A stretch of 64,000 nucleotides of DNA, from the IMG/VR virus record IMGVR_UViG_3300017971_000190, positions 1 to 64,000 of that record. One strand, written 5' to 3'. Position 1 is the stretch's first letter; each line of letters opens with the position of its first letter. Shown one piece after another: positions 3,664-21,956 of this stretch. The position numbers were made by a program, and so were the translations under genes. The notes beneath the pieces are model-generated. The model saw only the letters and a list, made by a program, of their open reading frames with translations. It did not search any database and was not told the origin of the DNA.

Positions 3664-3670
3664 AAGTTTA

Positions 3671-4700: not shown

Positions 4701-4703
4701 CTA

Positions 4704-4874: not shown

Positions 4875-5059
4875 AACTTCTTCCTAAGCACTTCGTGTTT
4901 GGGAGTGGGGCACTGGCATTTTAAAGTCCAACTCCATGTGGTTAGGGCAAACCAGTTCAAGACTTGGGCCTTTTGGCTAGCCCAGATGTATTTCTGATTG
5001 CCGACAAGTTACAGGCTGGTTGATACCAATTACCACGAAAGAAAGAGCTAGCCACTATG

Positions 5060-5144
5060 GGAAGGATGACCGAGCGGCTGAAGGTACACGCCTGCTAAGC
5101 GTGCGTAGGGAAACCTACCGAGGGTTCGAATCCCTCTCCTTCCG
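5060..5144 (+). tRNA. tRNA-Ser(GCT)
   Basis: Class II cloverleaf; cacgc-ctGCTaa-gcgtg; G73. Confidence 0.95.
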
Positions 5145-5248
5145 ACGCAGTTGGCCCCGCTGCACATCCTATCGAGAATAATTACCACAGATGTGTGTAC
5201 ACAAAGATGCTAGGATCTTTATTTGTGGTGGTTATTCTAGGGGCAATT

Positions 5249-5378
5249 GGCAGAGTGGCGAAACGAAAAGAGGCCCATACTAGTTAACCTCTTTCTTTGG
5301 TAAACGCGCGGTAACTCCGTGATTGGTCAATCAGTTAACTGGTTCACTATCTTCCAGGTTCAAATCCTGGCTCTGTCA
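5249..5378 (+). tRNA. tRNA-like RNA with a hairpin inserted in the D-loop and a degenerate anticodon arm
   Basis: ggcagag/ctctgtc; Leu/Ser-type D-arm tggcgaaac..tggtaaacgc split by aaagagg/cctcttt; T-arm ccagg-TTCAAAT-cctgg. Confidence 0.55.
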
Positions 5379-5461
5379 AGATGCTATCGCATACACTGCC
5401 TTCAAAAAGTGTATTGACAAATTAAAAAATGTTGTCACAAGACTACTAGGAGGTATTAATC

Positions 5462-5632
5462 ATGGAAAGACTTATTTATCGCTTTATTCCTAACGTTGAG
5501 ACCTTAATTGAGCAATACGAGTTGGAAGGTTTCGAGGTGCGGGGATACAGTGAGTACAGTTCTGACGGGATTCCTAGGGTGGCTGAGATGGTCAAGTGGG
5601 TTTCTGATAAACCGTCTCAAGAAAAGGAATGA
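5462..5632 (+). CDS. Hypothetical protein (56 aa; below the ORF-track cutoff)
   Basis: SD aggaggt, ATG..TGA open frame. Confidence 0.65.
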   Translation: MERLIYRFIPNVETLIEQYELEGFEVRGYSEYSSDGIPRVAEMVKWVSDKPSQEKE

Positions 5633-5657
5633 TTTTTGATTTTCTTCTCTTTCTTTT

Positions 5658-5732
5658 CGGGGAATAACTCAGTCTGGTAGAGTGCCTGCTTTGGGAGCAG
5701 GAAGTTCGCAGGTTCGAATCCTGTTTCCCCGA
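5658..5732 (+). tRNA. tRNA-Pro(TGG)
   Basis: Cloverleaf; C1-G72; cctgc-ttTGGga-gcagg. Confidence 0.95.
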
Positions 5733-5798
5733 TTAAGTTTATTTTTCAAAGTACACGAAAAATAAACTACCTCACTGGTACAGAGGTTAAAGTACTGT

Positions 5799-5959
5799 GG
5801 ACAAGTGTTGTGCAGAGGGTAGCACAGAGAGTAAGCTAACGAAAAGCGAAACCTGCCGTGCGAGAAGAGCAGGTCCACGGTGTAATCGGAATGCCTCTAG
5901 TGTGGTGCACCACAGCTAGTTTTAATGCCAATGAGAGGTTCGATTCCTCTCCTTGTCCA
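5799..5959 (+). ncRNA. tRNA-like termini enclosing a ~125-nt pseudoknotted insert
   Basis: ggacaag/cttgtcc plus T-arm gagagg-TTCGATT-cctctc; acctgc/gcaggt stem whose loop ccgtg pairs with cacgg. Confidence 0.55.
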
Positions 5960-5981
5960 AATGTTGGGTTGGTACTTTACC

Positions 5982-6180
5982 AACGACAACAGCTTTCTTC
6001 GGGAGCCCGGAAGAAAGGCTTAACCAGCGCCAGTGAGCTTCAATGGGTCGTGCACACACCGCGTTGAAGATGACTCTGGGGTAGTAGGAAGGTGCACAGA
6101 ACGGCAAACTAGGCTTTTCCTAGGTTGGCTTCTAGGCACCGATCCCTCCTTCAGTGGTGTGTGGGGCTTGGTTGTTCGTT
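5982..6180 (+). ncRNA. ~200-nt structured RNA with GTGCAC loop
   Basis: acgacaac/gttgttcgt ends; agctttcttc/gaagaaaggct hairpin; cttcaa/ttgaag stem; gtgcac at 6050 and 6092. Confidence 0.5.
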
Positions 6181-6219
6181 CACACAGGGCTCAATTTTAA
6201 AAATTATTAAAGGTGAAAA

Positions 6220-6417
6220 ATGAAGCTAACTAAAAAACAAGAAAAATTGGTAAAAGAGGTTATTGGAGACGGCACCGATTTTCCAAAATTTACAAACGAC
6301 CCTTATGTTAATCACAGAGTAGACATGCTTGTTTGTGACTGTCCACCTTGGGAGGAGTTGAGTAAGGAAGAGCAAGATTTGTATTTTGAGGAAGTAGAAG
6401 CTTCTAAAATGGAATAA
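6220..6417 (+). CDS. Hypothetical protein (65 aa)
   Basis: ORF with SD aaggtg. Confidence 0.65.
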   Translation: MKLTKKQEKLVKEVIGDGTDFPKFTNDPYVNHRVDMLVCDCPPWEELSKEEQDLYFEEVEASKME

Positions 6418-6438
6418 TTATTAATAGTATTGTTTCTT

Positions 6439-6510
6439 TGAGGCGTAGGCAAACGGTAAGCCACGAATTTTTGGTGTTCGGCATTGGAGGTTCGAATCCT
6501 CCCGCCTCAA
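6439..6510 (+). tRNA. tRNA-Gln(TTG)
   Basis: Cloverleaf; T1-A72; cgaat-ttTTGgt-gttcg. Confidence 0.88.
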
Positions 6511-6512
6511 AA

Positions 6513-6662
6513 ATGAAAAAAGAAAAACCTTTGAAGGATTTACTGCCGAATCCATGTTGTTGCAGTTTTCCCATGGAACCATTGAAAGTAACAAAACCAC
6601 TTAGAGAAAAATTGTGGAAGTGTCTCAAGTGTGGTAAGTTGATCTATAAATACAAAAACTAG
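6513..6662 (+). CDS. Small Cys-rich hypothetical protein (49 aa)
   Basis: ATG after tRNA-Gln; CC..CxxC. Confidence 0.45.
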   Translation: MKKEKPLKDLLPNPCCCSFPMEPLKVTKPLREKLWKCLKCGKLIYKYKN

Positions 6663-6665
6663 TGC

Positions 6666-6755
6666 GGAGTGTATAGTGTTTAAATGGCAACACGGCTAGT
6701 GGCTAACGGGTCATACCTGCCAGGCAAAAGTGGGTTCAAATCCTGCAACACTCCA
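6666..6755 (+). tRNA. Degenerate tRNA-like RNA
   Basis: ggagtgt/acactcc, D-arm gtgtt/aacac, TTCAAAT loop; anticodon arm poorly paired. Confidence 0.4.
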
Positions 6756-6824
6756 TATAATGTTTAGCGAGAGACAAGCAGTTGGGCTCTCGTGGCGACT
6801 TTGTAGAGGGTGTACAATTTTTCT

Positions 6825-6897
6825 GGGCGATTAACTCAGTTGGCAGAGTGCAATCTTTACGCGGTTGAAGTCACAGGTTCAAACCCTGTATCGCCCA
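6825..6897 (+). tRNA. tRNA-Val(TAC)
   Basis: Cloverleaf; caatc-ttTACgc-ggttg. Confidence 0.9.
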
Positions 6898-6905
6898 AAA
6901 AGAAG

Positions 6906-6934
6906 TTGACTTTACCACTACTCTGTGTTAGCCT
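6906..6934 (+). promoter_or_regulatory. Sigma70-like promoter
   Basis: TTGACT-17-TAGCCT with TG upstream of the -10. Confidence 0.45.
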
Positions 6935-7072
6935 TTTCTTAATCCGTGAGAGATCAGGCTCAACTGCTCTCACGGGGTTGTCAACGGGGTGGGCCAATCC
7001 CCTGACGGCGGGAGCTGCGTTTCCTTTTGGAAGCAGTCTCCCGTTTTAATTTTAGAAAGGAAACAAAGCACC

Positions 7073-7273
7073 ATGGTAGAAGAAAAAGAAACCTACGAAG
7101 CTATCAATTTTGGTTGGGACGGTGATGATTTTGTAACCGAAGATGTTACAGGCAAAATTCGTCGCTATCACGGTGCCAAAATTACCGACGTTAAGCGAGA
7201 GTGTTCTGTGGAAGTTCAAGACGGTAAAGTGATTGGACACTTTTCGTTTCAATTACCGAAAAAGAAAGGCTAA
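7073..7273 (+). CDS. Hypothetical protein
   Basis: SD aaagg; start re-assigned to ATG 7073. Confidence 0.65.
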   Translation: MVEEKETYEAINFGWDGDDFVTEDVTGKIRRYHGAKITDVKRECSVEVQDGKVIGHFSFQLPKKKG

Positions 7274-7277
7274 GAGA

Positions 7278-7565
7278 ATGACTATGGTAAAAGAACACGA
7301 ACTTAAGTATGGGGTAGATGGTTGCCTCTTAACCTGGCAAAACCCTTTTCCTGAAGAAGTAACCTGTGCTTGTTGTGGAAAAGAAGGTGCACGTTTAGCT
7401 TTTGTTCTACAAGAATCAGGCAAAAAGGAGCACGCTTGTAATTTATATCAAAACGATCCGGATGGAGAGGGATTTTGGGTGCACGATTCAGCTGCTTTTG
7501 CAGTTTATTTGTGCAGAGATATTAATTGCCCTGAAAAAGCTACCGCTAAGTGGAATCAAGCTTAA
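7278..7565 (+). CDS. Hypothetical Cys-containing protein
   Basis: ORF directly after the previous gene. Confidence 0.65.
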   Translation: MTMVKEHELKYGVDGCLLTWQNPFPEEVTCACCGKEGARLAFVLQESGKKEHACNLYQNDPDGEGFWVHDSAAFAVYLCRDINCPEKATAKWNQA

Positions 7566-7574
7566 AATATTTTT

Positions 7575-7647
7575 GGGTCCTTAGCTCAGCTGGTAGAGCA
7601 CCGGACTTTTAATCCGTAGGTCTTCGGTTCAAACCCGAAAGGACTCA
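7575..7647 (+). tRNA. tRNA-Lys(TTT)
   Basis: Cloverleaf; ccgga-ctTTTaa-tccgt. Confidence 0.92.
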
Positions 7648-7699
7648 TTAGTTCACCCATCAGAATAGTAAGTTTTAAGGAGAAAGATCATGAAGAAGA

Positions 7700-11303: not shown

Positions 11304-11627
11304 GTGTGTTATTTTCAGGACATTGCTGTAAAAAAAGTTGTAGTAGAAGTCATTTCCGAGCTGGTGGGAAAGCGTAAGCGCTTCACCGGTTGGGAAGTGA
11401 ATCAAAAATTACAAAACCGCAAAGGCTTTGCTCACCTTCCCCCACCCTGGCAGATCAGCTCCTATGTACGGGAACTGTTTAATGGGCATAACAGTGCTTT
11501 TTCAGGTTATGCCTGTTATCCAGTTGATGGAGGCCCCTTGCTCTATTTCCCAATTCCGTACTATGTGAGAAATCATGTCGAAAAAATCCAAAAAGAAATC
11601 CAAACGGAAGGCCAAACCGAAAAGTAA
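11304..11627 (+). CDS. Hypothetical protein
   Basis: SD aaagg, GTG start. Confidence 0.6.
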   Translation: MCYFQDIAVKKVVVEVISELVGKRKRFTGWEVNQKLQNRKGFAHLPPPWQISSYVRELFNGHNSAFSGYACYPVDGGPLLYFPIPYYVRNHVEKIQKEIQTEGQTEK

Positions 11628-12426
11628 CCCTTCTGTTTCGATGCCCAGTGTTCAGGAACTTTTTGGTTCCAGTTGTCGTTATCGCCTTAGCAGTTCTTTT
11701 CGTGGACCTCAATTAGAAGGTTACGAATTCTTATGTGCTTTCGAAAACAAAGTACACTCTTACCACACCCCCACAATGCAGAAGCTTGGCAATATTAAAC
11801 AAGCTTGGCATGGTACCAATAAGGCTGCACTTAAAAGCATTGCTGTGGATGGATTACTCACGCCTTTTCAGCGTCGAAAGCGAGATCGCTGGACTAGCAT
11901 ACACGGTATGTTTGGACCAGGAATTTATTTAGCTCCTAACATTGAAAAAGCGGCTATGTTCGCATGGCAGCATAAGCATTTGAAGTTTGTTCTTCAATGC
12001 TATGTTGCTTTGGGAAAACCTCATTTTGCTACTCAAACAGGAAACTATTACGAAACAGCTGAAATGGAAGACAAGCATAGTGTCATAGGTGGAAGAGGAT
12101 CACTGACTGGAGCTTGGGGTGGTAGACTCTTAAACGAAGAGTGGGTAATTTTCGATAATCAACAAGCTACTGTAGACATGGTACTCGTGTACAGATGCGT
12201 GGAAACTCCTAAGGCTACCCCATTTCGAGGCTCGATTGGACGACGATTTTATAACAGTAGTAGAGAACCACAAGGTGTTGTTCGTTACCACCCTTGCAAA
12301 CGAAATGGCAAGCTTTGTCGCAATGCTTTTGGCTCTGGTGGCTGTGTGGAAAAAGGTATAACTACTGGAGCGAGTGCCTTTTCAGATTACTGCAGAGATT
12401 ATCAAGTATCCTTGATTCACAAATAA
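11575..12426 (+). CDS. PARP-like (H-Y-E class) ADP-ribosyltransferase domain protein
   Basis: WHGT, GMFGPGIYLA, VALGK, NEEWVIF motifs. Confidence 0.8.
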   Translation: MSKKSKKKSKRKAKPKSNPSVSMPSVQELFGSSCRYRLSSSFRGPQLEGYEFLCAFENKVHSYHTPTMQKLGNIKQAWHGTNKAALKSIAVDGLLTPFQRRKRDRWTSIHGMFGPGIYLAPNIEKAAMFAWQHKHLKFVLQCYVALGKPHFATQTGNYYETAEMEDKHSVIGGRGSLTGAWGGRLLNEEWVIFDNQQATVDMVLVYRCVETPKATPFRGSIGRRFYNSSREPQGVVRYHPCKRNGKLCRNAFGSGGCVEKGITTGASAFSDYCRDYQVSLIHK

Positions 12427-12441: not shown

Positions 12442-12627
12442 ATGAGATATCGGGACAGGCCAGAAAACCGCCTTTGTACTGGACACAGAGCTTCTCGTCC
12501 AGAAAAATATGTGTGCTCGGTTTGTAAAAAAGAGAGGCATCGAATTGAGATGAGCCGAACAAGGGACATTTGTTTAGAGTGTATTTTTAAAGAAGAGGAA
12601 AATATCAATGAGCACAGCTTTGAGTAA
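12442..12627 (+). CDS. Small Cys/His Zn-binding protein
   Basis: CxxC pairs. Confidence 0.5.
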   Translation: MRYRDRPENRLCTGHRASRPEKYVCSVCKKERHRIEMSRTRDICLECIFKEEENINEHSFE

Positions 12628-13171
12628 AGACGATTTCAAAATTGTTTACTTTCATCTTCCCTCTCAAAATGAAGAGGAAGAACCTCCTAAAGGGGTTGTA
12701 GTAGTTCACTTATCTACAGGTCTTTCTGGAATCGGAGAAGACCCTAAATTAAATACCAGAGACAACATCCTAGTTGCTCTTAAAAAGATGGCACATCTAG
12801 CAAAAATTCCTCCAGGTGAAGTTGAGAGTTTTTTCTCTTGTCCGACCTGTCACCTGGAAAGACTACCTTATTTTGAAAATTGGAAAAGTGACCATAGTTA
12901 TGAATATGGTAGAATCTTTACTGCTAATGATCATCCCGCTAAAGCTAAGGATGTTAAATTTAAGCCTACTCCTATTTGTGCTGCCATAGTTTTCAAAAAT
13001 GAAAAGGATACATATTGGTTTTGGGATGTAGTCCCAACAGGAGAAGAGGATCATGAAGATCCTCTAGGTTTTTCTCACTTTGTTGAAGATGCTATTAAAG
13101 AAGCAGAAAAGGCAGCTCTTGAGATTGTGAATAAGTCTCTTAAAGCTGATGAACTCGGACCTCGGAATTAA
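12608..13171 (+). CDS. Hypothetical protein
   Basis: 187-aa ORF, SD gagg. Confidence 0.7.
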   Translation: MSTALSKDDFKIVYFHLPSQNEEEEPPKGVVVVHLSTGLSGIGEDPKLNTRDNILVALKKMAHLAKIPPGEVESFFSCPTCHLERLPYFENWKSDHSYEYGRIFTANDHPAKAKDVKFKPTPICAAIVFKNEKDTYWFWDVVPTGEEDHEDPLGFSHFVEDAIKEAEKAALEIVNKSLKADELGPRN

Positions 13172-13172
13172 A

Positions 13173-13715
13173 ATGCCAGCAAAACCCACTGTTAAGAGTA
13201 CCATTAAAAAACATGTGCTTGAAAGTTTGTTAGAGGGTGGTAATGTAATCTTGCACATAAACCCCAAAGTTAAAGAAAAAGTTGTACTTCCACCTGATTT
13301 GGATGAAGCTTTTAATGTCGTTCTCTGTATTGGCCTGAATACTCCCTATCCAATTCCAGATTTAACCCTTTCTGATATAGGAGTCGAAGCTACACTGACT
13401 ATTAATCGAGAAGAGTATTTTTGTTCTTTACCTTGGAAATCGATTTATTATATGGGATTAGTAGGAGATATTGGGAGAGGTTGGCCAGAAGATGCTCCTA
13501 TGGCATTGCTTCATCATTGGCATCTACGATTGGCCCAACCCTTTGAAGAGCTTAGAAATGAATTAGAAAATGAGGGTGTCTCTACAGTTTATGAAGAATC
13601 AGAACCAGCTAAAAAGAAATACCCTTTTACAATTATTTCTGGAGACGGAGAGGCATCTTCCTCTCACCCCGTAGATTCACATTTCCTAACTTTACTTACT
13701 CCTTCCTCTGATTAA
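13173..13715 (+). CDS. sspB: SspB-like ClpXP specificity-enhancing adaptor
   Basis: KKHVLESLLEGG.VILHINP..VVLP..L..L..G.NTPYPIPDL.LSD.GV.ATLT.N..EYFC.LPWKSIY fits the delta/myxobacterial SspB fold; acidic flexible tail. Confidence 0.7.
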   Translation: MPAKPTVKSTIKKHVLESLLEGGNVILHINPKVKEKVVLPPDLDEAFNVVLCIGLNTPYPIPDLTLSDIGVEATLTINREEYFCSLPWKSIYYMGLVGDIGRGWPEDAPMALLHHWHLRLAQPFEELRNELENEGVSTVYEESEPAKKKYPFTIISGDGEASSSHPVDSHFLTLLTPSSD

Positions 13716-13729
13716 TTGTCTTTTCTTCC

Positions 13730-13758
13730 TTGACAAAACTAGTTTTTCAGTCATAAAA
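13730..13758 (+). promoter_or_regulatory. Variant promoter TTGACA-16-CATAAA
   Basis: Shares TTCAGTCAYAAAA with 15419-15431. Confidence 0.4.
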
Positions 13759-13801
13759 ATAGGAGGGAAATGTAATTTATCCTTTAGAAGGAGAAAGAAC
13801 C

Positions 13802-15319
13802 ATGTTGATTTTCAGAAGTTTTTTGCTCACCTTTTTCGTTTTCTTTTTGACTGCTTGTGGGGCTGGAAGTGGGGTCAGTAACGATATCCCTGACTCAGCG
13901 GTTGGAAATGATGCTGTTTCCAACAACAATAACAACAACGGAAACGAAAATACCAACAGCAACTCCAATTCAAATCCTGTTTGTGGTAATGGGAATATTG
14001 AGGAGGGGGAAATTTGTGATGATGGAGCTGCCAACAGCGATACGGAACCTAACGCCTGCCGAACTACTTGCACTCTACCTTCTTGCGGTGATGGTGTTGT
14101 TGATGACGACGAAGCCTGTGACGATTCGAACCTGGGTGGTTCTACTTGCGCCAGTGAGGGCTTCACAGCCGGTCTGCTAAGTTGCGCTTCGAGTTGCGAG
14201 TTGGATTTTACAAACTGTACAACTTGCGGTAACGGAGTAGCTGAAGGCTCTGACCCAGCGTGGCCGGGTTACGAGGTTTGTGACGGTACGGACCTTAGGA
14301 GTCTGAGCTGCACCGATTTTGGTCTCCCAGCTGGGGTATTGGCTTGTTCTGCGTGCACTTGGAACACCTCTGGTTGCGTCGGAGCGGCAACTTGTGGAAA
14401 CGGAACAGTGGAAGCGTGGGAAGGTTGTGACGACGGTAACACCACCCCTTGCGATGGTTGCAGCTCGACGTGTCAGGTAGAAGAGTGCGGTAACGGGGTG
14501 GTGGAGTGCTCGGAAACCTGTGACGATGCCAACAGTTCCAACGAAGATGCCTGTCTCAATATCTGCGTTCTCAATACTTGTGGAGATGGGTACATCAACG
14601 TTGGTGTTGAAACCTGTGATGACGGAAATAACAACGTCAACGACGCTTGTCCAGATGGACCAGCGGGTACTTGTCAAATTACCACTTGCGGTGATGGTTT
14701 CACTAATTTAAATACAGAGACTTGCGACGACGGCAACGGCAACAACGAAGATGCCTGTCCTGATGGTGTTGGCGGAACGTGCCTTGCCGCTTCTTGTGGA
14801 GATGGTTTTGTTCAGACGGGGGTTGAGAACTGCGATCCTGGTTTGGACCCTATCTGCAATGGTGATTGTACTGGTTCCTGTGGTGATGGAGTTTGGAACA
14901 GTACTTACGAGATTTGTGATCCGTCAGTATCTGGACATGAAATGTGTAATCCTGACTGTGCGGGTTATTGTGGAGATGGGATTTTGCGATCTCAGTGGGA
15001 AGACTGTGATCCTGGAATTTCTGGTGGTCCGCCATGTTTCTATCCTGAATGCACCTTGTCTGTTTGTGGTGATGGGATTTGTGATTGGAATAATGAGTCT
15101 CATAGTAGTTGTCCAGGAGATTGCCCTTGTAGTAATCCTACCGATACTTATTGTGGTGGACAGTGCTGGCCCCCAGCCAATGGCGAATACCCAACCTGTT
15201 GTTCTGATGGAATTGCAATGTACAACGATTTTCCGGGCGGTTATTATATTGTACATTGTGGTGACTGCTCGATCACCTGTAGTAGCACACAAGATTGTGT
15301 TTCTGGTCAGTGCGTTTAA
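13802..15319 (+). CDS. Lipoprotein with Myxococcus-type Cys-rich (DUF4215-like) repeats
   Basis: Lipobox LTAC; many CGNG/CGDG..E.CDDG repeats; poly-Asn linker. Confidence 0.85.
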
Positions 15320-15401
15320 AAATTATTTCTCTCCTTTCTTTTTAATTTTCAACAATTAAATAAATGAGGGAAGAAAAATAAAAATAAAAGTCAAAAAAGT
15401 C

Positions 15402-15431
15402 TTGACGAAAATACTTTCTTCAGTCACAAAA
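15402..15431 (+). promoter_or_regulatory. Variant promoter TTGACG-17-CACAAA
   Basis: Same TTCAGTCAYAAAA motif as at 13746. Confidence 0.4.
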
Positions 15432-15509
15432 TATATTGTGAGAGACAGAAAAACAAAAAACTCAACTGGAGAAATTAAAACTCCTACAAACCCAGAAAGG
15501 ACTGAAACC

Positions 15510-16031
15510 ATGAAGACCAAGACCAACAAGACGAGCATCATCGAGACCATCACCACCGCGCTGACGGACCTGCGTGCACAGCGAGACGATCTGAACAAGC
15601 AGATCTCCGAGCTGGAGGGAATGCTTTCCCATTACGAGTCGGAGCTGCACCGTGTCATCGCCTCCCTGAAGGGAACCAAGAAGGCCAAGCGCACCGTCAA
15701 GCGTGGTCCCGGTCGTCCCAAGGGCAGCAAGAACAAGGCGAAGACGAGCACTCGTCGCGGCCCCGGTCGCCCGAAGGGTTCGAAGAACAAGGCGAAGACG
15801 GCGAAGACCGAGAAGACGGTCGAGAAGAAGTCAGCCGCTCCGCTGAAGGCGGTCATCGTCTCCATGCTCCGCGAGTACGGCGAGCCCGTGCACGTCAACG
15901 AGCTGCAGCATCGGCTGGAGACCGAGGGTGTGACCGACAACGCCAAGACGGTCGCCGTCACCCTGTCCGCCCTGAAGAAGAAGGGTGAGGTCAAGAAGGG
16001 TGACGAGGTGGGCTTCTGGGCCGTCGCGTAA
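15510..16031 (+). CDS. Basic DNA-binding protein: coiled coil + 2 AT-hook-like RGPGRPKG repeats + C-terminal winged-helix-like domain
   Basis: SD aaagg before ATG 15510; Lys/Arg-rich; codons end almost exclusively in G/C. Confidence 0.8.
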   Translation: MKTKTNKTSIIETITTALTDLRAQRDDLNKQISELEGMLSHYESELHRVIASLKGTKKAKRTVKRGPGRPKGSKNKAKTSTRRGPGRPKGSKNKAKTAKTEKTVEKKSAAPLKAVIVSMLREYGEPVHVNELQHRLETEGVTDNAKTVAVTLSALKKKGEVKKGDEVGFWAVA

Positions 16032-16054
16032 TTCCTGCCACTTTCCTTCCCCCT

Positions 16055-16092
16055 GAAGGCCCTGGGAATTTTCCTGGGGCCTTCACCTTTTT
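16055..16092 (+). terminator. Intrinsic terminator
   Basis: gaaggccctgggaa/ttcctggggccttc hairpin followed by a T-rich tract. Confidence 0.75.
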
Positions 16093-16117
16093 GGCCCTCT
16101 CTTTGTAAAATACCCCC

Positions 16118-16510
16118 ATGAAAATTTTAGTGTGTGGTTCTAGGAATTGGGATAGACGAAAACCAATTTGGGAAGCTCTTGGAGCTGTTAAGAAAAAGAA
16201 AAATGTGACCGTTATACATGGAACTGCTAAAGGAGCTGATACACTGGCTGGGGAAATTGGGTGGGAGTTAGGATTTAATATAGAAAAATACCCAGCTAAT
16301 TGGGAAAAGTATGGTAAAGCTGCTGGTCCTCTTCGTAATCAAAAAATGATTGATAAAAATCCTGATGTGGTGTTGGCTTTTACAGAAGACTTAGATTCTT
16401 CACGTGGGACAGCTGATACAGTACGACGTGCAAAAAAAGCAGGTATTCCCGTTTTTGTTTATCCAAAAACTAAAAATTGGTACAAACGCTGGAAGAAAAT
16501 AAAAAGTTGA
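16118..16510 (+). CDS. SLOG-superfamily YspA/DUF2493-like protein
   Basis: ILVCGSR, VIHG.AKGAD, W..YGKAAGP.RN..M, VLAF, RGT.DTV..A motifs. Confidence 0.85.
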   Translation: MKILVCGSRNWDRRKPIWEALGAVKKKKNVTVIHGTAKGADTLAGEIGWELGFNIEKYPANWEKYGKAAGPLRNQKMIDKNPDVVLAFTEDLDSSRGTADTVRRAKKAGIPVFVYPKTKNWYKRWKKIKS

Positions 16511-16535
16511 CACTCTTGTTACCTTGTGCTAGCGT
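16507..16535 (+). promoter_or_regulatory. Sigma70-like promoter
   Basis: TTGACA-17-TAGCGT with TGTG. Confidence 0.55.
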
Positions 16536-16555
16536 AGTCTAATTGGAGGTGGTAG

Positions 16556-16783
16556 GTGAGTATTCGAGCTAGAAGTGACGGTCGGGCCGATATGTACCTT
16601 TGTGATGCTGAAGGTTGTCACACCCGACGAGCTAGTTCTGTAGGAACTCCTAGAGGTTGGGTTCAAGGTGAGCATGGTTACTACCACCTCTGTACTTTCT
16701 GTAAACATCTTAAACCTCGCTACGACCAAATTGTTAGAGTTCACGGTGTAAAAGCTTTGACCGGCAGAAAAGGACCAGGTTGA
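16556..16783 (+). CDS. Small Cys/His-rich hypothetical protein
   Basis: SD ggaggt. Confidence 0.6.
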   Translation: MSIRARSDGRADMYLCDAEGCHTRRASSVGTPRGWVQGEHGYYHLCTFCKHLKPRYDQIVRVHGVKALTGRKGPG

Positions 16784-16784
16784 A

Positions 16785-17273
16785 ATGGATAGACTTACTG
16801 AAACAGTTCCATATCAAATTCTTCCAACTACTTTTAAACGCTGTCAGCTTTGTGGTTACACAAGTGATGATATTTGCGAATTCAGGTTGTGGTGTGAATG
16901 TGATGAAAATGACAAACCTGAGCCCTATAATATTTTGATTGCTTGTAAAAGTGATGATTGCTTTCAAATAATTAAAGAGCACGAGCGTCTTTATTTTGAA
17001 CTCTCTTGGAGTACTGGTGAACCAGGTCATTTTATCTTGCTTTGTGGAGATTGTCCTCATAGAGATGGAACACACTGTACTCATCCAGATTTAAAGATTA
17101 ATGGTGGGAATGGTTTACTTCTTCATAGAGCTGGAGATCCAATTTTCCGCGCTAATATTTGCTACCATGACGATAATGCAGAATACGGATTAAAGTGCGG
17201 AAAATTGAAAGCTCCTTTTGTAGGGTGTGCTGGTTTGCCATCAGATCACGATAATCACATTAAAGATATGTAA
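16785..17273 (+). CDS. Cys-rich hypothetical protein
   Basis: 162-aa ORF. Confidence 0.7.
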   Translation: MDRLTETVPYQILPTTFKRCQLCGYTSDDICEFRLWCECDENDKPEPYNILIACKSDDCFQIIKEHERLYFELSWSTGEPGHFILLCGDCPHRDGTHCTHPDLKINGGNGLLLHRAGDPIFRANICYHDDNAEYGLKCGKLKAPFVGCAGLPSDHDNHIKDM

Positions 17274-17546
17274 ATGCAGACTAAATCCAAAGACGACGTT
17301 GTTTGGGAAGGTGGAATTAACGATGCTCACCATTGGTTACCTAATGGTTTGCATGTACGAATTACAGCAATCACTCTTCCTAGTGGTCCAAGTATCTTTA
17401 TTTGGGATGTGAGTGACCCCTTAATCCGGGCTCCAGTGGCAGCTAGTATTTACGAGTTTCAATTGGAGAACCACCCTAAAACTTTTGAGGTGGCTGCAAG
17501 TCAAGCTCTACACGCCGCTTCTAAAATCAAACCTTACGGGAGTTGA
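17274..17546 (+). CDS. Hypothetical protein
   Basis: Abutting gene. Confidence 0.6.
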   Translation: MQTKSKDDVVWEGGINDAHHWLPNGLHVRITAITLPSGPSIFIWDVSDPLIRAPVAASIYEFQLENHPKTFEVAASQALHAASKIKPYGS

Positions 17547-17761
17547 TCTTGCCTTATCAAAAACATCAACATAAGTGGACTTTTTTGAATGCCGCAGGAG
17601 CTAAAAAATTCTCCTGGTGCAAAGGATGTGGTTCATTGAGAGTAGAAACTTTGTTTGGAAAAGTTTCTTATCGTCTGAGCAATTCTTATAAAGCTTCACT
17701 GCCCAAAGTAGCTGATGGATTACCAACACAAGAGGAGAAAGAAACTGGTGCAGAAGATTAA
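17543..17761 (+). CDS. Hypothetical protein
   Basis: 4-nt overlap with the previous gene. Confidence 0.5.
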   Translation: MILPYQKHQHKWTFLNAAGAKKFSWCKGCGSLRVETLFGKVSYRLSNSYKASLPKVADGLPTQEEKETGAED

Positions 17762-17904
17762 AAAGAAAAGCGTGTGGTCTAAAAAAGGAGAGACTACTCC
17801 GTCTGTGCGTGTAAGTAGAATAAGAAAAGAAGAGATTTGTTTTTATCCCTACTTTGGTGGTGGGGCTGAACAAAAGCTAAACCGAGATCAATTTCTCCAT
17901 TTTT

Positions 17905-18135
17905 ATGAGCTTTGTGAGGGTTAACGTGGCTACTACTAAATTTACACACGAGGGAGATCTTCTCAACACAGTTTCTAGCCATGATTTGGTAATTGATACT
18001 GTTCGTTTACGAAAAGTTGGAGCCTGTTGGGTGGACGAAAAAGGTAGAAAGTTTGATTTAAAAACAGGCTATGATACTAAGCGTGCTTGGGGGTTGGTGA
18101 AGTTAGATTTGGCTTCGGTCAAAAAAATGAAATAA
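17905..18135 (+). CDS. Hypothetical protein
   Basis: ORF in gene string. Confidence 0.5.
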   Translation: MSFVRVNVATTKFTHEGDLLNTVSSHDLVIDTVRLRKVGACWVDEKGRKFDLKTGYDTKRAWGLVKLDLASVKKMK

Positions 18136-18557
18136 TGAGTAAACTACCCGTTCAACCTACATTGCCTGGTACAAGAATTAACCCTAACGCAGTATTGTGT
18201 CCATACTGTGGCAAAAGAGCTGTACTCACCACCAGTAAAGAGATTTACGGTAAAGATTATGGACCAGTCTACCTGTGTAAATGCAAGAAGGAGTGGGCTT
18301 ACGTTGGATGTCATCCTGGTACCACCAAACCTTTGGGAAGATTAGCTGATGCTCAATTGCGAGCTGCTAAAAAAGGGGCTCACAGGGTTTTTGATAAACT
18401 TTGGAAACGCAAAGGTGGGAATAGAAAAAAAGCTTACGCTTGGTTGGCTAAGCAATTAGATATACCTGGAAAAGAGTGTCATATTGGGGAAATGGATGTA
18501 GATCTGTGTATGAGAGTAATTGAGGTTTGTAAAAAGAAACTTCACGGAGAGTCGTAA
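18135..18557 (+). CDS. DUF3268-like zinc-finger protein
   Basis: CPYCG..YG..YLC..C..AYVGCH.GT..PLG.LAD..LR..AH..FD.LW..AY.WLA..L..CHIG pattern. Confidence 0.85.
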   Translation: MSKLPVQPTLPGTRINPNAVLCPYCGKRAVLTTSKEIYGKDYGPVYLCKCKKEWAYVGCHPGTTKPLGRLADAQLRAAKKGAHRVFDKLWKRKGGNRKKAYAWLAKQLDIPGKECHIGEMDVDLCMRVIEVCKKKLHGES

Positions 18558-18561
18558 ATAA

Positions 18562-19065
18562 ATGATGACACCAATTTGCTTAAATGATTGGTTTGAGGCT
18601 AATAAACCAAAGGTAGGATTGTTCTGGGAAAAAGCTGCGTATAAACAAATTGAATTTTTTAGACATTTAGTTTTGGCGGTTTGTTTAAACGAACATCAGT
18701 CCAGTCTAGAAGAATTAGATTCAGCACGTCCTGTAGTAATTGGAGAACATACCTCTAAATCTATAAAATTGCCGGTAGTTGAATTTCGTAGTAAGAATGG
18801 TATAATTTTTACCATTCGAGATAATTTTTTAAACTATAAAATTTCTGTATCTTCCCCATTTCCTGTGGAAGTTGATTTCTTTGATTTATTCAATCCAAAA
18901 CCAAACGAATGTTTGCATCCTGTTTATTTTGAAGGTTTTCCACCCCATAAAATTTTTGGATCTTTTAGCGAAAATAATAAACAATTCTCAGCACATCTTC
19001 TTTTAAAAGAGGAAGTGTACCTTTTAATTTGGATAATAGTCCGAACTTTGGCAGACAAAGAATAA
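18562..19065 (+). CDS. Hypothetical protein
   Basis: 167-aa ORF. Confidence 0.7.
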   Translation: MMTPICLNDWFEANKPKVGLFWEKAAYKQIEFFRHLVLAVCLNEHQSSLEELDSARPVVIGEHTSKSIKLPVVEFRSKNGIIFTIRDNFLNYKISVSSPFPVEVDFFDLFNPKPNECLHPVYFEGFPPHKIFGSFSENNKQFSAHLLLKEEVYLLIWIIVRTLADKE

Positions 19066-19080
19066 TTAAGGAGTAGTACC

Positions 19081-19431
19081 ATGCCAATTTGGATGTATTT
19101 TATACTGATATTTTGCTTCCTTTTTGGTCTAGGTTTTCGTTATCTATCTATTAAATGTCGTCTTCGTTTTTATGTTTTTCTTTGGCCTGTTTTAGGTTTT
19201 CTCCTTCCACTTCCTGCATCAGCTACAAAATTTATGTGGAGACCTGTTGCTTTTTGCTTAGCCTATGTAGCTGGTGTTATCGTAGGGTCTTTCCTTTTTA
19301 GAAAAGTTAAACCACTACCAGATCCAATTAAAGAATTGATTAAAGATATTAAAGCAAATGGAAAAATAATAGTTGTAGGTGAAGCTACAGGTGAAATTGT
19401 AGAAACTAAAGATTTTAGTAGAGAGGACTAA
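19081..19431 (+). CDS. Membrane protein (about 3 TM)
   Basis: Hydrophobic segments; SD aaggag. Confidence 0.7.
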   Translation: MPIWMYFILIFCFLFGLGFRYLSIKCRLRFYVFLWPVLGFLLPLPASATKFMWRPVAFCLAYVAGVIVGSFLFRKVKPLPDPIKELIKDIKANGKIIVVGEATGEIVETKDFSRED

Positions 19432-19433
19432 AA

Positions 19434-19700
19434 ATGTATATTCCAGTCCGGTGTGCTCTTTGTGGTGAAGAAGCAGATCAAGATGACTATACTCGTTCAA
19501 TTCTAACACGCAGTGTTTGTGACTCTTGCTACAATGTATTTATGGAACTGAAGCGAACAGTTGAAAATAAAGAAGGAAATTCTGAAGAAACTAATTATGC
19601 GGCAAAATTGTACAATCTTGCTTGGAATAAAATTACAGCAGGAAAAGTAAGTGGATTCGATTGGCTCTTTACCTACGCCGAAGAGAAATGGGGAGAATAG
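19434..19700 (+). CDS. Zn-binding hypothetical protein
   Basis: CxxC..CxxC. Confidence 0.6.
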   Translation: MYIPVRCALCGEEADQDDYTRSILTRSVCDSCYNVFMELKRTVENKEGNSEETNYAAKLYNLAWNKITAGKVSGFDWLFTYAEEKWGE

Positions 19701-20035
19701 ATACCATGCTGACAGACGGTGAAAAGATGGTTTGGGCAGCTGCATTTGTAAGTGTTTATATGGAGGGAGGCAGAAGTATTGGACGCTGTATAACAGCAGC
19801 TACAAAAGCAGTTACAAAATTAAAAGAGGGTTCTTCTCATTTTTGCCAAACCTCGGGAAATCCTGAGGCTAATTCTATGCTGCAAGAAATGTTAGGGAAG
19901 ACAGGAGAATCTACAAGCTTTACTTGTTATTCTTGCGAAACGATTGTAATATGTTCGCCTGAAGAAGCACACCTTACAGGTCCTAAACTTTGTGGAGACT
20001 GTCTTCAGAAGGAGTACGATAAACATGACACCTAA
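19661..20035 (+). CDS. Hypothetical protein with C-terminal Zn ribbon
   Basis: ORF in gene string; start uncertain. Confidence 0.6.
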   Translation: MALYLRRREMGRIDTMLTDGEKMVWAAAFVSVYMEGGRSIGRCITAATKAVTKLKEGSSHFCQTSGNPEANSMLQEMLGKTGESTSFTCYSCETIVICSPEEAHLTGPKLCGDCLQKEYDKHDT

Positions 20036-20264
20036 ACCTGTTTTTGAAGTGCAAACTAGAGATGTTAGTGGAGAATTGAGGTGGTGGTCTACTCTCAAAG
20101 AAGCTCTAGCCTACGCTAAAGAAAATGAGACAGTTTGGAAAATCAGTTTTCCTGTGGGACCCCCCGAAAATGGTGAGCGTTGTCGTTTTGTGCGCAGTGA
20201 AGAGGGCTGTTGGTTTTACGAAGATATTGTAGCTGCTGTGCAAGCCGAGCTGGAGAAAAAATGA
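20025..20264 (+). CDS. Hypothetical protein
   Basis: SD aaggag before ATG 20025. Confidence 0.6.
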   Translation: MTPKPVFEVQTRDVSGELRWWSTLKEALAYAKENETVWKISFPVGPPENGERCRFVRSEEGCWFYEDIVAAVQAELEKK

Positions 20265-20491
20265 ATCGTTCAGACCAGCTTTTGACAATTACTTGTCCAA
20301 TTTGTGGTACTGGTATTGCTACAGCTTGTCATCTCGTGTTCGAAGATGATGACCCCATAGAATATACAAGTGCTATAGCTTGCTGTGAAGAAAATTGCGG
20401 TCATAGGGTGAGTACTTCCTCAAACAAAAGTATGGATGATGCAATGTTTAAAGCTTGGGAACATTATGTTTCCGATGGGAGTAAAAAATGA
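20261..20491 (+). CDS. Zn-ribbon protein
   Basis: CPIC..CC..C; SD ggag. Confidence 0.55.
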   Translation: MNRSDQLLTITCPICGTGIATACHLVFEDDDPIEYTSAIACCEENCGHRVSTSSNKSMDDAMFKAWEHYVSDGSKK

Positions 20492-20672
20492 CATATTTAT
20501 CTCCGATTCTGAAACCACTTAGCAAGACGGCCATTAGGTTTCGTTTTAAAGTAAGTGAGAAAGAATTAGAATAATTAATTACTAGTGGACAATTTCCTCC
20601 TCCAGATGGAGTATATGGTGAAAAACTATTCCAAGTTCCTGTATGGAAACAAAGATACACTGAATAATTTTT

Positions 20673-21050
20673 TTGCGATCTACAGAAAGAAAAATTGAAA
20701 TGGGAGCAGTAAACATACCACCCGAAGAAATCAAAATAGTTCCTGTGGATTGTGGGTCTATTAGAAAACCTAGTTGTCCTCATGAAGAGTGTGATTATCG
20801 CTTAGACACAGCAATTGTTGGCTGTAACCTGACTGGTAAAACAAATGTTCGTTTTGGTTTTTGGTGTAATCACTGTAAAACCTTTTTTAGGTATACAGCC
20901 GATGTTTTTGATGCCAGTGGTCACTACTGGCTTCTTTGCCGTGCTATTGAAGACACCCATTTGGTTACATTTACAGGCGATGAAAACTCTTTAAAAGAAG
21001 AGTACTACGACCAAACCTTCAACAAAAAAGAGGAGAAACAAAATGGATAG
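20673..21050 (+). CDS. Zn-binding hypothetical protein
   Basis: CP..C..WCNHC; start probably ATG ~20700. Confidence 0.6.
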   Translation: MRSTERKIEMGAVNIPPEEIKIVPVDCGSIRKPSCPHEECDYRLDTAIVGCNLTGKTNVRFGFWCNHCKTFFRYTADVFDASGHYWLLCRAIEDTHLVTFTGDENSLKEEYYDQTFNKKEEKQNG

Positions 21051-21342
21051 TGTACAGTATGTTGGCGCTGGCAAAGAAGAAACCAAAAAAGCTATTGTAG
21101 CTGCTAAAGCAAAATTGAACTTGGGACAACATTGGACTCTCAAAGCAGATCATGAGGATATGCTTCCTATTTATCCTACCGATATTTTAATTCTAAGCAC
21201 CTCAGATTTTTCTTTTGGAGGAGTTGTGAGTCTTTGTCTAGCCCCATCCAAATTAGAAGGTAGACATTTTCCAGCAAGAGCTGATATCATTCTAGACTAC
21301 TATAAGCTAGTTTATGACCCTTATGAAAAAGAGGCAGTTTAA
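21043..21342 (+). CDS. Hypothetical protein
   Basis: SD aggag. Confidence 0.65.
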   Translation: MDSVQYVGAGKEETKKAIVAAKAKLNLGQHWTLKADHEDMLPIYPTDILILSTSDFSFGGVVSLCLAPSKLEGRHFPARADIILDYYKLVYDPYEKEAV

Positions 21343-21956
21343 TGTCTCACCCGCCAAATTGTCCTGGAGACATTGGTGTTTGTTCTTTTTGTGGCAACAC
21401 AGATGCTGACGGACGACGCCTTATTCAGGGTCCTCTGGTAGTCATTTGTGAAGAGTGTGTAGGCACTTGTCAAATTCAATTGAGACAATGGCCTTTTACT
21501 CACGGCGTAAGAAACGTCTACATAAGCTCCAGCTGGAAAAATAGAGAGAATGTCAGAGAGCTAGCCACTCAATTAACTGAGGCTGGTTACGACGTTTACG
21601 ACTTCACCAACCCAGCTTGCAGAAAAAGCCCAGAGATTCCACCCGAGAAATTTCCTGAACAATTCGATCCCGCGAAACACCGATACAAGGATTACATAAG
21701 CTCTGTTCCAGCTTGGCGCGAAGCTGTAGAAGGTAATCGAGAAGCGCTTGACAATTGCGATGCAGTTGTGTTACTACTACCCTGTGGGTTAGATGCCCAT
21801 GCGGACGCTTTCTATGCTTTAGGAAAAGACAAGTACCTAATCGTTTGCGGACAACCCCGAGCTGGAGATAGAACCCCAACTCACCTTTGGGCAGACAAAA
21901 TTGTCTCTGATTTTGCTTCTGTACTCTCTATTTTGAAGGAACTTAAAAATGGTTGA
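21342..21956 (+). CDS. ClpX-type C4 zinc-binding domain fused to a nucleoside-deoxyribosyltransferase/TIR-like Rossmann domain
   Basis: CSFCG..RRLIQGP.V.ICEECV..C; then VYISSSW..RE..L..AGYDVYDF..ALDNCDAVVLLLPCG.DAH.D..YA.G..K. Confidence 0.75.
   Translation: MSHPPNCPGDIGVCSFCGNTDADGRRLIQGPLVVICEECVGTCQIQLRQWPFTHGVRNVYISSSWKNRENVRELATQLTEAGYDVYDFTNPACRKSPEIPPEKFPEQFDPAKHRYKDYISSVPAWREAVEGNREALDNCDAVVLLLPCGLDAHADAFYALGKDKYLIVCGQPRAGDRTPTHLWADKIVSDFASVLSILKELKNG

What the first reader, a model, noticed from the sequence alone, without database searches (positions are those of the whole stretch)
13173..21956. Two parts of the ClpXP adaptor interface encoded by a phage: SspB and a ClpX Zn-domain fusion
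Known: SspB tethers substrates to the ClpX zinc-binding domain. Seen: an SspB-like gene (13173) and a ClpX-like C4 domain fused to an NDT/TIR-like domain (21342). Inference: redirected proteolysis, adaptor sequestration, or protease-gated control of a nucleotide-cleaving enzyme. The phage SspB tail ends TPSSD rather than a typical ClpX-binding peptide.
Basis: partly seen in the sequence, partly recalled or inferred. Interest (0 to 1): 0.62.

Follow-up and report, generated by a model that had tools for sequence, protein, structure and literature searches.

The report
Phage SspB adaptor plus ClpX zinc-domain fusion
An uncultured marine or sediment jumbo phage encodes a divergent copy of the bacterial protease adaptor SspB and, 8 kb away, the ClpX zinc domain that SspB normally docks on, fused to a nucleotide-sugar-cleaving type enzyme; both domain calls hold, but nothing yet shows that the two proteins work together.

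Summary
Both observations are real. The ORF at 13173-13715 (+) matches no curated SspB model directly. It is still a divergent SspB-family protein. A profile of its small clade finds 1590 relatives, and 28 of 34 sampled are Pfam SspB. A wider profile hits E. coli SspB. In two structure searches the top matches are all SspB. TPSSD is preceded by a clade-invariant F-L-T-L-L (F-L-R-L-L in one relative), which aligns with the LRVVK-type ClpX-binding motif of relatives. The tether motif is therefore atypical, not absent.

The ORF at 21342-21956 (+) carries a genuine ClpX C4 zinc-binding domain (ZBD) with all four Cys ligands. It is joined to a confidently modelled nucleoside-2-deoxyribosyltransferase (NDT)/DNPH1-fold domain from a large, mostly viral family of stand-alone proteins. 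In that domain the usual catalytic Glu is an invariant Asp.

Both genes recur about 10 kb apart on a related contig. Another relative has the same ZBD at the same position, fused to a different C-terminal domain. The ZBD therefore looks like a portable module.

The record holds no ClpP, ClpX ATPase or tmRNA, so any action goes through the host's ClpXP. No functional link was shown. Four other SspB-bearing virus records lack a ZBD.

The parts
13173..13715 (+). Divergent SspB-family adaptor gene (180 aa from 13173; residue numbers in this report follow the 188-aa frame starting at 13149)
   Evidence: Transitive profile homology to PF04386. SspB fold by Foldseek and by exhaustive VIA-align. Language-model neighbours are SspB clusters, mostly Uroviricota.
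13194..13496 (+). SspB substrate-binding domain (residues about 16-116: helix 17-30, then five strands)
   Evidence: This region is matched by 1590 homologues. Model secondary structure. Aligned to SspB chains over model residues 13-109.
13683..13697 (+). XB-like tether motif F-L-T-L-L (residues 179-183), followed by TPSSD
   Evidence: F179, L180, L182 and L183 are invariant in the clade; one relative has FLRLL. The motif aligns with the C-terminal LRLVK/LRVVK of relatives. 108 of 152 nearest homologues carry L-[RK]-h-h in the last 20 residues, and 100 of them have exactly one residue after it.
21342..21956 (+). Gene for the fusion of a ClpX-type zinc-binding domain and an NDT-fold domain (204 aa)
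   Evidence: The same architecture occurs in two relatives, P0006 and P0007.
21366..21491 (+). ClpX C4 zinc-binding domain (residues about 9-50; Cys14, Cys17, Cys36, Cys39)
   Evidence: PF06689 E 1.7e-10. 2ds5 E 2e-7, with about 50% identity over 40 residues. It is the only ZBD in the 221-kb record.
21507..21953 (+). NDT/DNPH1-superfamily domain (residues 56-204) with Asp155 where related phage NDTs have the Glu of the E-L-G motif
   Evidence: AF2 pLDDT mostly above 90. Z 16.5 to 7o62_B, and 13-15 to other NDTs and DNPH1. phrog_12607 E 1.7e-13. About 230 stand-alone homologues at 50-70% identity. Asp/Glu alignment.
12608..13171 (+). 187-aa ORF with no family match, translationally coupled to the SspB-like gene (context; possible partner or cargo)
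   Evidence: Its stop TAA is followed by one base and then the ATG at 13173. An upstream neighbour of 184-189 aa is conserved in relatives. It is not SspB-like.
21043..21342 (+). 99-aa ORF whose stop overlaps the start of the fusion gene (TAATG) (context)
   Evidence: No family match.

Best explanation
Two early-region genes of an uncultured jumbo phage copy the two sides of the bacterial ClpX-adaptor docking interface. Because the record has no protease of its own, they most likely act on the host's ClpXP.

The SspB-like protein would bind a cargo peptide with its SspB-type domain. It would dock on ClpX-type zinc-binding domains through its conserved FLTLL motif, acting as a phage adaptor or a competing anti-adaptor.

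The ZBD on the second protein would be a portable docking handle for XB-type tails. It would pull SspB-type tails (the phage's own, the host's, or both) away from ClpX, or tie them to whatever enzyme is fused behind it. Here that enzyme is an NDT-fold nucleotide or nucleoside N-glycosidase-like protein.

Shown: the domain identities, the conserved motif, the recurrence of the pair in a relative, the payload swap behind the ZBD, and the absence of ClpP, ClpX ATPase and tmRNA from the record.

Inferred: every binding event, the direction of the effect on proteolysis, and the enzyme's substrate.
For: - SspB family and fold.
- The XB-like motif is conserved while the flanking tail varies. The published ZBD-binding consensus is L-K-x-h, similar to the SspB motif (PMC7226468), and XB works at any position (PMC12373786).
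- The ZBD is about 50% identical to E. coli ClpX residues 9-48, with all four Cys.
- The ZBD is kept at 82% identity while the C-terminal domain is replaced at the same syntenic position in a relative (P0273). This argues that the ZBD has a function independent of its payload.
- About 230 stand-alone NDT-like homologues do without a ZBD, so the enzyme fold does not need one.
- Both genes lie on one related 60-kb contig about 10 kb apart.
- No ClpP, AAA_2 or tmRNA in the 221-kb record.
- Phage SspB homologues have been proposed before as ClpXP adaptors or competitors (PMC5587285; bioRxiv 10.1101/2023.02.24.529968).
Against: - There is no experimental or computational evidence that the two proteins bind.
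- The genes are 8 kb apart, with about 20 unrelated small ORFs between them.
- Co-occurrence is seen only in close kin, so it is a single evolutionary event.
- Four other SspB-bearing virus records, one complete at 185 kb, have no ZBD.
- The motif lacks the basic residue of L-R/K-h-h in four of the five clade tails seen and is not C-terminal, so it may bind a ZBD weakly or not at all.
- ZBDs are stable dimers (my knowledge; PMC12373786 calls the domain dimeric), so plain dimerisation would also explain a portable ZBD.
- The record is only about 63% complete, so the absence of ClpP or ClpX is not proven.
- The host is unknown.
Confidence: 0.4

Rival explanations
1. The functions are unrelated. 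The SspB-like protein acts alone on host ClpXP, as an adaptor or as a competitive inhibitor of host SspB. The ZBD in the fusion is only a zinc-stabilised dimerisation module for the enzyme behind it. Finding both in one genome is incidental.
For: NDT and DNPH1 enzymes work as dimers or higher oligomers (my knowledge), and the ZBD is dimeric (PMC12373786). The genes are 8 kb apart in different translationally coupled strings. Other phage SspB carriers lack a ZBD. zf-C4_ClpX occurs as an accessory domain on unrelated proteins such as cyanobacterial sigma factors (PMC11119718).
Against: Hundreds of stand-alone NDT-like homologues need no ZBD. The same ZBD is also fused to a coiled-coil plus zinc-ribbon domain. 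The only known peptide ligand class of ZBDs is the tail type that the same genome encodes.
Confidence: 0.35
2. The ZBD fusion is a pure decoy. It soaks up the tails of host adaptors and N-domain-dependent substrates and so shuts down adaptor-dependent ClpXP delivery, for instance to protect phage proteins or block protease-triggered defences. The phage SspB-like protein escapes the decoy because its tether motif has changed.
For: The ZBD closely resembles ClpX. The phage tail has lost both basic residues of the canonical motif, and the phage ZBD helix lacks several acidic residues of the E. coli helix, as read from the alignment. Phage-encoded inhibitors of host AAA+ proteases exist (T4 PinA against Lon; my knowledge).
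Against: A decoy needs no enzyme fused to it. No binding data exist. The charge argument rests on one alignment, without knowledge of the contact residues.
Confidence: 0.15
3. The ZBD forms mixed dimers with the N-domain of host ClpX. This would park the fused enzyme on the protease or poison ClpX N-domain function.
For: About 50% identity to the ClpX N-domain over 40 residues. The N-domain is a dimer (PMC12373786).
Against: ZBD dimers are very stable and would probably have to mix during synthesis (my knowledge). The host ClpX is unknown. Nothing here tests this idea.
Confidence: 0.05

Closest known systems
Bacterial SspB (E. coli, H. influenzae, Caulobacter SspB-alpha; PF04386)
   Same: Same fold for the substrate-binding domain. 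Same layout: folded domain, low-confidence linker, then a short hydrophobic motif near the C-terminus. A shared h-h-I-x-G-D/E block in the linker.
   Different: It does not reach the Pfam model directly. The tether motif is FLTLL rather than L-R/K-V-V-K and is followed by 5-8 further residues. The linker has clade-invariant blocks (HHWH, VSTVY) of unknown role. It is encoded by a phage.
Phage-encoded SspB homologues: Pseudomonas phage pf16 gp18 and Erwinia jumbo phage RAY gp039
   Same: These are phage copies of SspB, proposed to act as a ClpXP adaptor or as a competitor of host SspB. RAY gp039 is cytoplasmic (PMC5587285; bioRxiv 10.1101/2023.02.24.529968). Atlas clusters of SspB-like proteins are largely viral.
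   Different: pf16 gp18 is reported as close to its host's SspB, whereas this clade is far from any Pfam-recognisable SspB. tblastn of the 180-aa protein against the 50,697-record phage collection found nothing at E<=0.01. None of those reports mentions a ZBD partner.
ClpX N-terminal zinc-binding domain (PF06689; PDB 2ds5, 2ds8, 1ovx)
   Same: C4 ligands at identical positions, about 50% identity over residues 9-48, N-terminal location.
   Different: No AAA+ module follows it. Several acidic helix residues of E. coli are replaced. It has a conserved His-Pro-Pro-Asn-Cys-Pro-Gly leader of its own.
Nucleoside 2-deoxyribosyltransferases, DNPH1 and MilB/BcmB N-glycosidases, and phage 'nucleoside deoxyribosyltransferase' genes (phrog_12607; mycobacteriophage Nilo gp81)
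   Same: Same fold, Z 13-16.5 over about 125 residues. 34% identity to the mycobacteriophage genes. The L-P-C-x-x-x-A-H block before the catalytic position is conserved.
   Different: Pfam NDT models score below their cut-offs. Asp155 stands where the relatives have the Glu of E-L-G. A conserved insertion of about 28 residues, rich in Pro and Glu, follows strand 2. The substrate is unknown.
zf-C4_ClpX as an accessory domain on non-ClpX proteins (for example cyanobacterial sigma-70 factors)
   Same: A ClpX-type zinc finger attached to an unrelated functional domain (PMC11119718).
   Different: Different partner domains, cellular rather than viral, and the function is unknown there too.

Membership tests
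SspB (PF04386) | Direct match to the curated family model | tested here: not met
   No hit at E up to 10 in Pfam or NCBIfam, or with PF04386 run over the record.
SspB (PF04386) | Homology to recognised members through intermediate sequences | tested here: met
   The clade profile finds 1590 proteins at E<=1e-3. 28 of 34 aligned members hit PF04386. The 34-sequence profile hits E. coli SspB at E 2.6e-4 and Agrobacterium 2nys at 6.5e-4.
SspB (PF04386) | Fold of the substrate-binding domain | tested here: met
   The top 16 Foldseek hits are SspB, with TM by target up to 0.69. VIA-align against 48,161 chains gives Z>=8 for only four chains, all SspB. Caveat: the model's mean pLDDT is 52.
SspB (PF04386) | C-terminal ClpX-binding (XB) motif L-R/K-h-h | tested here: inconclusive
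   FLTLL aligns with the motif and is conserved, and one relative has FLRLL. The basic residue is missing and 5 residues follow the motif. 100 of 152 relatives have the canonical near-terminal form.
SspB (PF04386) | Binds the ClpX N-domain and stimulates degradation of a bound cargo | not testable with these tools
   Needs biochemistry.
ClpX zinc-binding domain (PF06689) | Match above the curated cut-off, with four Cys ligands | tested here: met
   41 bits against a cut-off of 27 and 43.6 bits in the genome scan. Cys14/17/36/39 align with the ligands of 2ds5.
ClpX (full protein, TIGR00382 / PRK05342) | AAA+ ATPase module after the zinc domain | tested here: not met
   Only residues 13-49 match, at 24-26 bits against cut-offs of about 360-370. 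There is no AAA_2 anywhere in the record.
ClpX zinc-binding domain (PF06689) | Dimerises and binds XB-type peptides | not testable with these tools
   Needs biochemistry or a better-calibrated complex prediction.
Nucleoside 2-deoxyribosyltransferase superfamily (PF05014 / PF15891) | Match above the curated cut-off | tested here: not met
   PF15891 scores 14.1 bits against a cut-off of 30. phrog_12607, the phage NDT family, does match at E 1.7e-13.
Nucleoside 2-deoxyribosyltransferase superfamily (PF05014 / PF15891) | Fold | tested here: met
   Z 16.5, rmsd 2.4 over 126 residues to 7o62_B. Other NDTs and DNPH1 score 13-15. Model pLDDT is above 90 over most of the domain.
Nucleoside 2-deoxyribosyltransferase superfamily (PF05014 / PF15891) | Catalytic Glu nucleophile in the E-x-G motif | tested here: not met
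   Asp155, invariant in 29 of 29 sequences, aligns with the Glu of H-L-E-L-G in Nilo gp81, RR1-B and L015. That this Glu is the nucleophile is from my knowledge of the family.
TIR domain (PF13676) | Match above the cut-off, and best structural neighbour | tested here: not met
   19.9 bits against a cut-off of 28, covering only residues 59-87. TIR structures (SARM1, SPARTA) score Z about 12.5, below the NDTs.

The most novel reading that the evidence does not exclude
The phage carries its own private tether system. The FLTLL tail of its SspB-like protein has co-evolved with the phage ZBD: both lost the charges of the LRVVK/ClpX pair. ZBD modules would then serve as interchangeable handles on different payloads, an NDT-fold enzyme in one phage and a coiled-coil zinc-ribbon protein in a sister phage. 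The SspB-like dimer would bridge these payloads to each other, or to host ClpX for timed destruction, while the free ZBDs blunt host adaptor traffic.
Probability: 0.15. Interest if true: 0.8.

Novelty: new variant of a known kind. Interest (0 to 1): 0.5.

Why it matters
Adaptor-mediated delivery to ClpXP controls stress responses, antitoxin turnover and the fate of some phage proteins. Phage SspB copies have been noticed but never explained. No phage protein that mimics the ClpX docking domain turned up in the papers I searched.

If the ZBD handle binds adaptor tails, it would be a new way for a virus to rewire or jam a host AAA+ protease. It would also be a natural counterpart to engineered degrader peptides that use the XB-ZBD contact. 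The payload swap behind a constant ZBD gives two natural constructs to compare.

Separately, the Asp-for-Glu NDT-fold family is large, mostly viral and uncharacterised.

Tried and rejected
- **Complex prediction** (two copies of ZBD residues 1-56 plus SspB-like tail residues 150-188): score 0.16 against a mark of 0.34, no verdict. It is not evidence either way.
- **First model of the SspB-like protein:** mean pLDDT only 52. I used it for fold searches, where the signal was nevertheless specific. No second model was possible.
- **Close relatives of the SspB-like clade in IMG/VR:** none found besides the window's own record.
- **L015:** it looked like a distant ZBD-NDT fusion by tblastn, but its ORF has no ZBD.
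- **Host inference failed.**
  - The alignments were too diverse for a genome-contig scan.
  - The DNA polymerase is only about 24% identical to cultured phages.
  - The nearest SspB-like homologues sit on short phage-like contigs.
- **Other phage proteins with XB-like C-termini:** no convincing case. Three short uncalled ORFs of 60-66 aa (two of them outside the window) carry L-T-h-h near their ends; none has FL[TR]LL in its last 15 residues.
- **Upstream 187-aa ORF as a second SspB:** rejected.
- **PADLOC:** no meaningful hit.
- **Profile of the NDT-like family against PDB sequences:** nothing.
- **Terminase_6N and HK97 capsid Pfam models:** neither found in the record. The viral label therefore rests on the IMG/VR classification, the tRNA array, the polymerase and topoisomerase genes, and the single-strand array of small genes.
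- **ZBD residues that contact the XB peptide:** I could not find them in the open papers, so conservation of the binding surface was not assessed.
- **Other:** Read laying was not used. No RNA run holds the stretch.


Full report
**Setting.** The window is the first 64 kb of an IMG/VR virus record of 221,679 bases, classed as linear and about 63% complete. The same fusion protein also occurs on a contig of 298 kb. Runs that hold the stretch are sediment and seawater metagenomes. Genes run almost entirely on the + strand. There is a tRNA array near the start, followed by a long string of small ORFs, many with CxxC pairs. Further on lie a family A DNA polymerase and topoisomerase II subunits. 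The polymerase is only about 24% identical to any cultured phage, so the host is unknown. Most large ORFs match no Pfam or PHROG family.

**The SspB-like gene (13173-13715, +).** The upstream ORF stops at 13169-13171 and the ATG follows one base later. Homologues begin at the equivalent position. Direct searches were blank: Pfam, NCBIfam, PHROGs and PDB sequences, including a permissive Pfam run and PF04386 run over the whole record. The word search found only three relatives.

A profile of those four sequences, run against 1.8 billion representatives, found 1590 proteins at E<=1e-3. All matched over residues about 18-116. Of 34 aligned sequences, 28 match Pfam SspB on their own. The 34-sequence profile hits E. 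coli SspB end to end at E 2.6e-4, and the Agrobacterium homologue 2nys.

The AlphaFold model is poor (mean pLDDT 52), yet its helix-plus-five-strand core gives specific results. The top 16 Foldseek hits are all SspB. In an exhaustive alignment to 48,161 chains, only four reach Z>=8: the E. coli, Haemophilus, Agrobacterium and Caulobacter SspB structures, at Z 8.1-8.9. The next chain scores 6.2. Language-model neighbours are SspB clusters whose known members are mostly phages. I conclude that this is a true but divergent SspB-family protein.

**The tail.** The alignments say otherwise. Among the 152 nearest homologues, 108 have L-[RK]-h-h within the last 20 residues, and 100 of those have exactly one residue after it, the classical LRVVK ending. 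The window's clade aligns F-L-T-L-L to that motif. F179, L180, L182 and L183 are invariant across clade members that are only 45-68% identical overall. One member has F-L-R-L-L, which fits the canonical pattern.

Published peptide-array work gives L-K-x-h as the ZBD-binding consensus (PMC7226468). Engineered degraders show that the XB motif works wherever it sits in a chain (PMC12373786). The tether is therefore present but atypical: no basic residues, and a short Ser/Pro/acidic extension. Other phage SspB genes that I retrieved have the canonical ending, LRAVP, or an internal LRSIK with a trailing extension. The linker also holds clade-invariant blocks (HHWH, VSTVY, and P-F-x-I-I-x-G-D/E) whose role I cannot explain.

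**The fusion (21342-21956, +).** Residues 14-44 match the ClpX C4 zinc finger at 41 bits against a cut-off of 27. Residues 9-48 align without gaps to residues 9-48 of the E. coli ClpX N-domain structures, at about 50% identity, with Cys14, 17, 36 and 39 on the zinc ligands. NCBIfam ClpX models match only this stretch. It is the record's only ZBD.

The rest of the protein (residues 56-204) belongs to a large family. About 230 proteins were found by the word search. Most are stand-alone proteins of 145-160 aa, 50-70% identical, with no Pfam assignment. Atlas clusters for this family are 69-100% viral. The alignment-based model is confident (mean pLDDT 87, and above 90 over most of this domain). 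Its best structural neighbours are nucleoside 2-deoxyribosyltransferases (Z 16.5 to 7o62_B), then DNPH1, YtoQ and MilB. TIR domains come about four Z units lower. PHROGs places it in a 'nucleoside deoxyribosyltransferase' family at E 1.7e-13. Mycobacteriophage genes with that annotation are 34% identical.

Aligned with those genes, the window's family has an invariant Asp (Asp155, in H-A-D-A-F) where they have the Glu of H-L-E-L-G. From my knowledge of NDT and DNPH1 enzymes, that Glu is the nucleophile. A carboxylate is kept, so I expect an active enzyme with an altered active site. The substrate is unknown. Neighbours of the stand-alone homologues in 13 IMG/VR loci are ordinary replication, DNA-modification and nucleotide-metabolism genes: PAPS reductase, DNA methylases, DnaB, ThyX and dCMP deaminase.

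**How the two genes relate.** They are 8 kb apart, with about 20 small ORFs of unknown function between them. Each is translationally coupled to a different upstream ORF. On a related 60,262-base contig both genes are present about 10 kb apart, in the same order and with the same landmarks: the DUF4215 protein, the YAcAr protein and DUF3268. This shows conservation within the clade, not independent recurrence.

A search restricted to the ZBD found one more protein, P0273. Its ZBD is 82% identical, but its C-terminal part is a coiled coil plus a zinc ribbon (weak Lar-like hit). It lies at the same syntenic position in another relative from the same samples. That C-terminal part has no counterpart in the window's genome. 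So the ZBD is the constant part and the payload is exchangeable. Together with the hundreds of NDT-like homologues that lack a ZBD, this argues that the ZBD brings a function of its own.

In the other direction, four further virus records with SspB-like genes, one of them complete at 185 kb, have no ZBD. No cultured phage in the collection has either the fusion or a recognisable copy of this SspB clade. The record has no ClpP, no ClpX-type ATPase and no tmRNA, so any effect on proteolysis must go through the host machine. The caveat is that about a third of the genome is missing.

**Mechanism.** Two activities of a ClpX N-domain are established: dimerisation, and binding of short XB-type peptides from adaptors and some substrates (PMC9963277, PMC7226468, PMC12373786).

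My preferred reading, at about 0.4, is that both phage proteins address this interface. The SspB-like protein would act as an adaptor or anti-adaptor that docks through FLTLL. The ZBD would act as a portable receptor for such tails, either sequestering them or tying them to the fused enzyme.

The main rival, at about 0.35, is that the two are functionally unrelated and the ZBD merely dimerises its payload. A pure-decoy reading and a heterodimer-with-ClpX reading are less likely but not excluded.

One observation is suggestive, though I cannot evaluate it without the contact map. The phage tail has lost the two basic residues of LRVVK. The phage ZBD helix has lost several acidic residues present in E. 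coli (Asp41, Asp45, Glu50 and Glu51 by the alignment). This would fit a matched pair.

**Comparison with what is known.** Phage SspB homologues have been reported in Pseudomonas phage pf16, where a competitive role against host SspB was proposed from modelling (PMC5587285). Another is in Erwinia jumbo phage RAY, where the protein is cytoplasmic and called a putative ClpXP adaptor (bioRxiv 10.1101/2023.02.24.529968). Neither was tested biochemically in those papers. ClpX-type zinc fingers on non-ClpX proteins are known from cyanobacterial sigma factors (PMC11119718). PHROGs holds a few small phage families that match the domain.

What I did not find anywhere is a ZBD fused to an NDT-fold enzyme, a ZBD with exchangeable payloads, or a phage carrying both an SspB-like gene and a ZBD. 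I therefore rate this as a new variant of a known kind, of moderate interest. The combination is unusual and directly testable, but the link between the parts is so far only an inference.

**Limits.** The SspB-like model is of low confidence. The host and its ClpX and SspB are unknown. Co-occurrence rests on one lineage. The contact residues of the ZBD-XB interface were not available to me. No expression data exist for this stretch.

Noticed in passing
window 12608-13171 (+): A 187-aa ORF with no family match is translationally coupled to the SspB-like gene (TAA, one base, then ATG). Relatives keep it as the immediate upstream neighbour. It is a candidate partner or cargo of the adaptor.
   Followed up: partly
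window 11575-12426 (+): A phage-encoded PARP-catalytic-domain protein (PF00644, E 6e-13, residues 69-206). It has a very basic N-terminus and a Cys-rich C-terminus.
   Followed up: no
window 16118-16510 (+): A YAcAr (YspA/cpYpsA-related SLOG) protein (PF10686, E 4e-17). With the PARP-like and NDT-fold genes, this makes three nucleotide- or NAD-type domains within 10 kb.
   Followed up: no
window 13802-15319 (+): A 505-aa Cys-rich repeat protein (DUF4215, five repeats) with a lipoprotein-like N-terminus. Local GC is 0.51 against about 0.39 on either side. It is conserved directly downstream of the SspB-like gene in relatives.
   Followed up: partly
window 15402-16031 (+): A 209-aa protein with a coiled coil, two near-identical AT-hook-like repeats (G-P-G-R-P-K-G-S-K-N-K-A-K) and a weak winged-helix C-terminus. 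It may be a DNA-binding or nucleoid-associated protein.
   Followed up: no
window 21507-21953 (+), residue 155 of the fusion: In this large, mostly viral NDT-fold family the Glu of the E-L-G motif is an invariant Asp, and a conserved Pro/Glu-rich insertion of about 28 residues follows strand 2. The family has no Pfam model that reaches its cut-off.
   Followed up: partly
P0273, on ENA contigs of 7,939 and 1,120 bases from samples ERZ23498365 and ERZ23498357 (no DNA held): A sister phage has the same ZBD (82% identical) fused to a coiled coil plus a zinc ribbon (weak Lar-like hit) in place of the NDT-fold domain, at the same syntenic position.
   Followed up: partly
window 3372-7648 and 59131-59211: An array of eight tRNA genes (Glu, Met, Leu, Ser, Pro, Gln, Val, Lys) and a lone tRNA-Thr. 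Two more (Arg, Tyr) lie at about 128 kb in the record. There is no tmRNA.
   Followed up: yes
window 18087-18557 (+) and the small ORFs from 16.5 to 23 kb: A DUF3268 zinc-finger protein (E 7.5e-39), present in two copies in a relative, and many small ORFs with paired CxxC motifs and no family match.
   Followed up: no
window 26074-46266 (+): A run of large ORFs (510, 372, 831, 1538, 704, 756 and 307 aa) with no significant Pfam or PHROG match. These may be structural or RNA-polymerase-like genes of a very divergent jumbo phage.
   Followed up: partly
window 13149-13715 (+), residues 122-125 and 145-148 of the SspB-like protein: There are clade-invariant blocks in the supposed flexible linker, H-H-W-H and V-S-T-V-Y. 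They are unusual for an SspB linker and unexplained.
   Followed up: no
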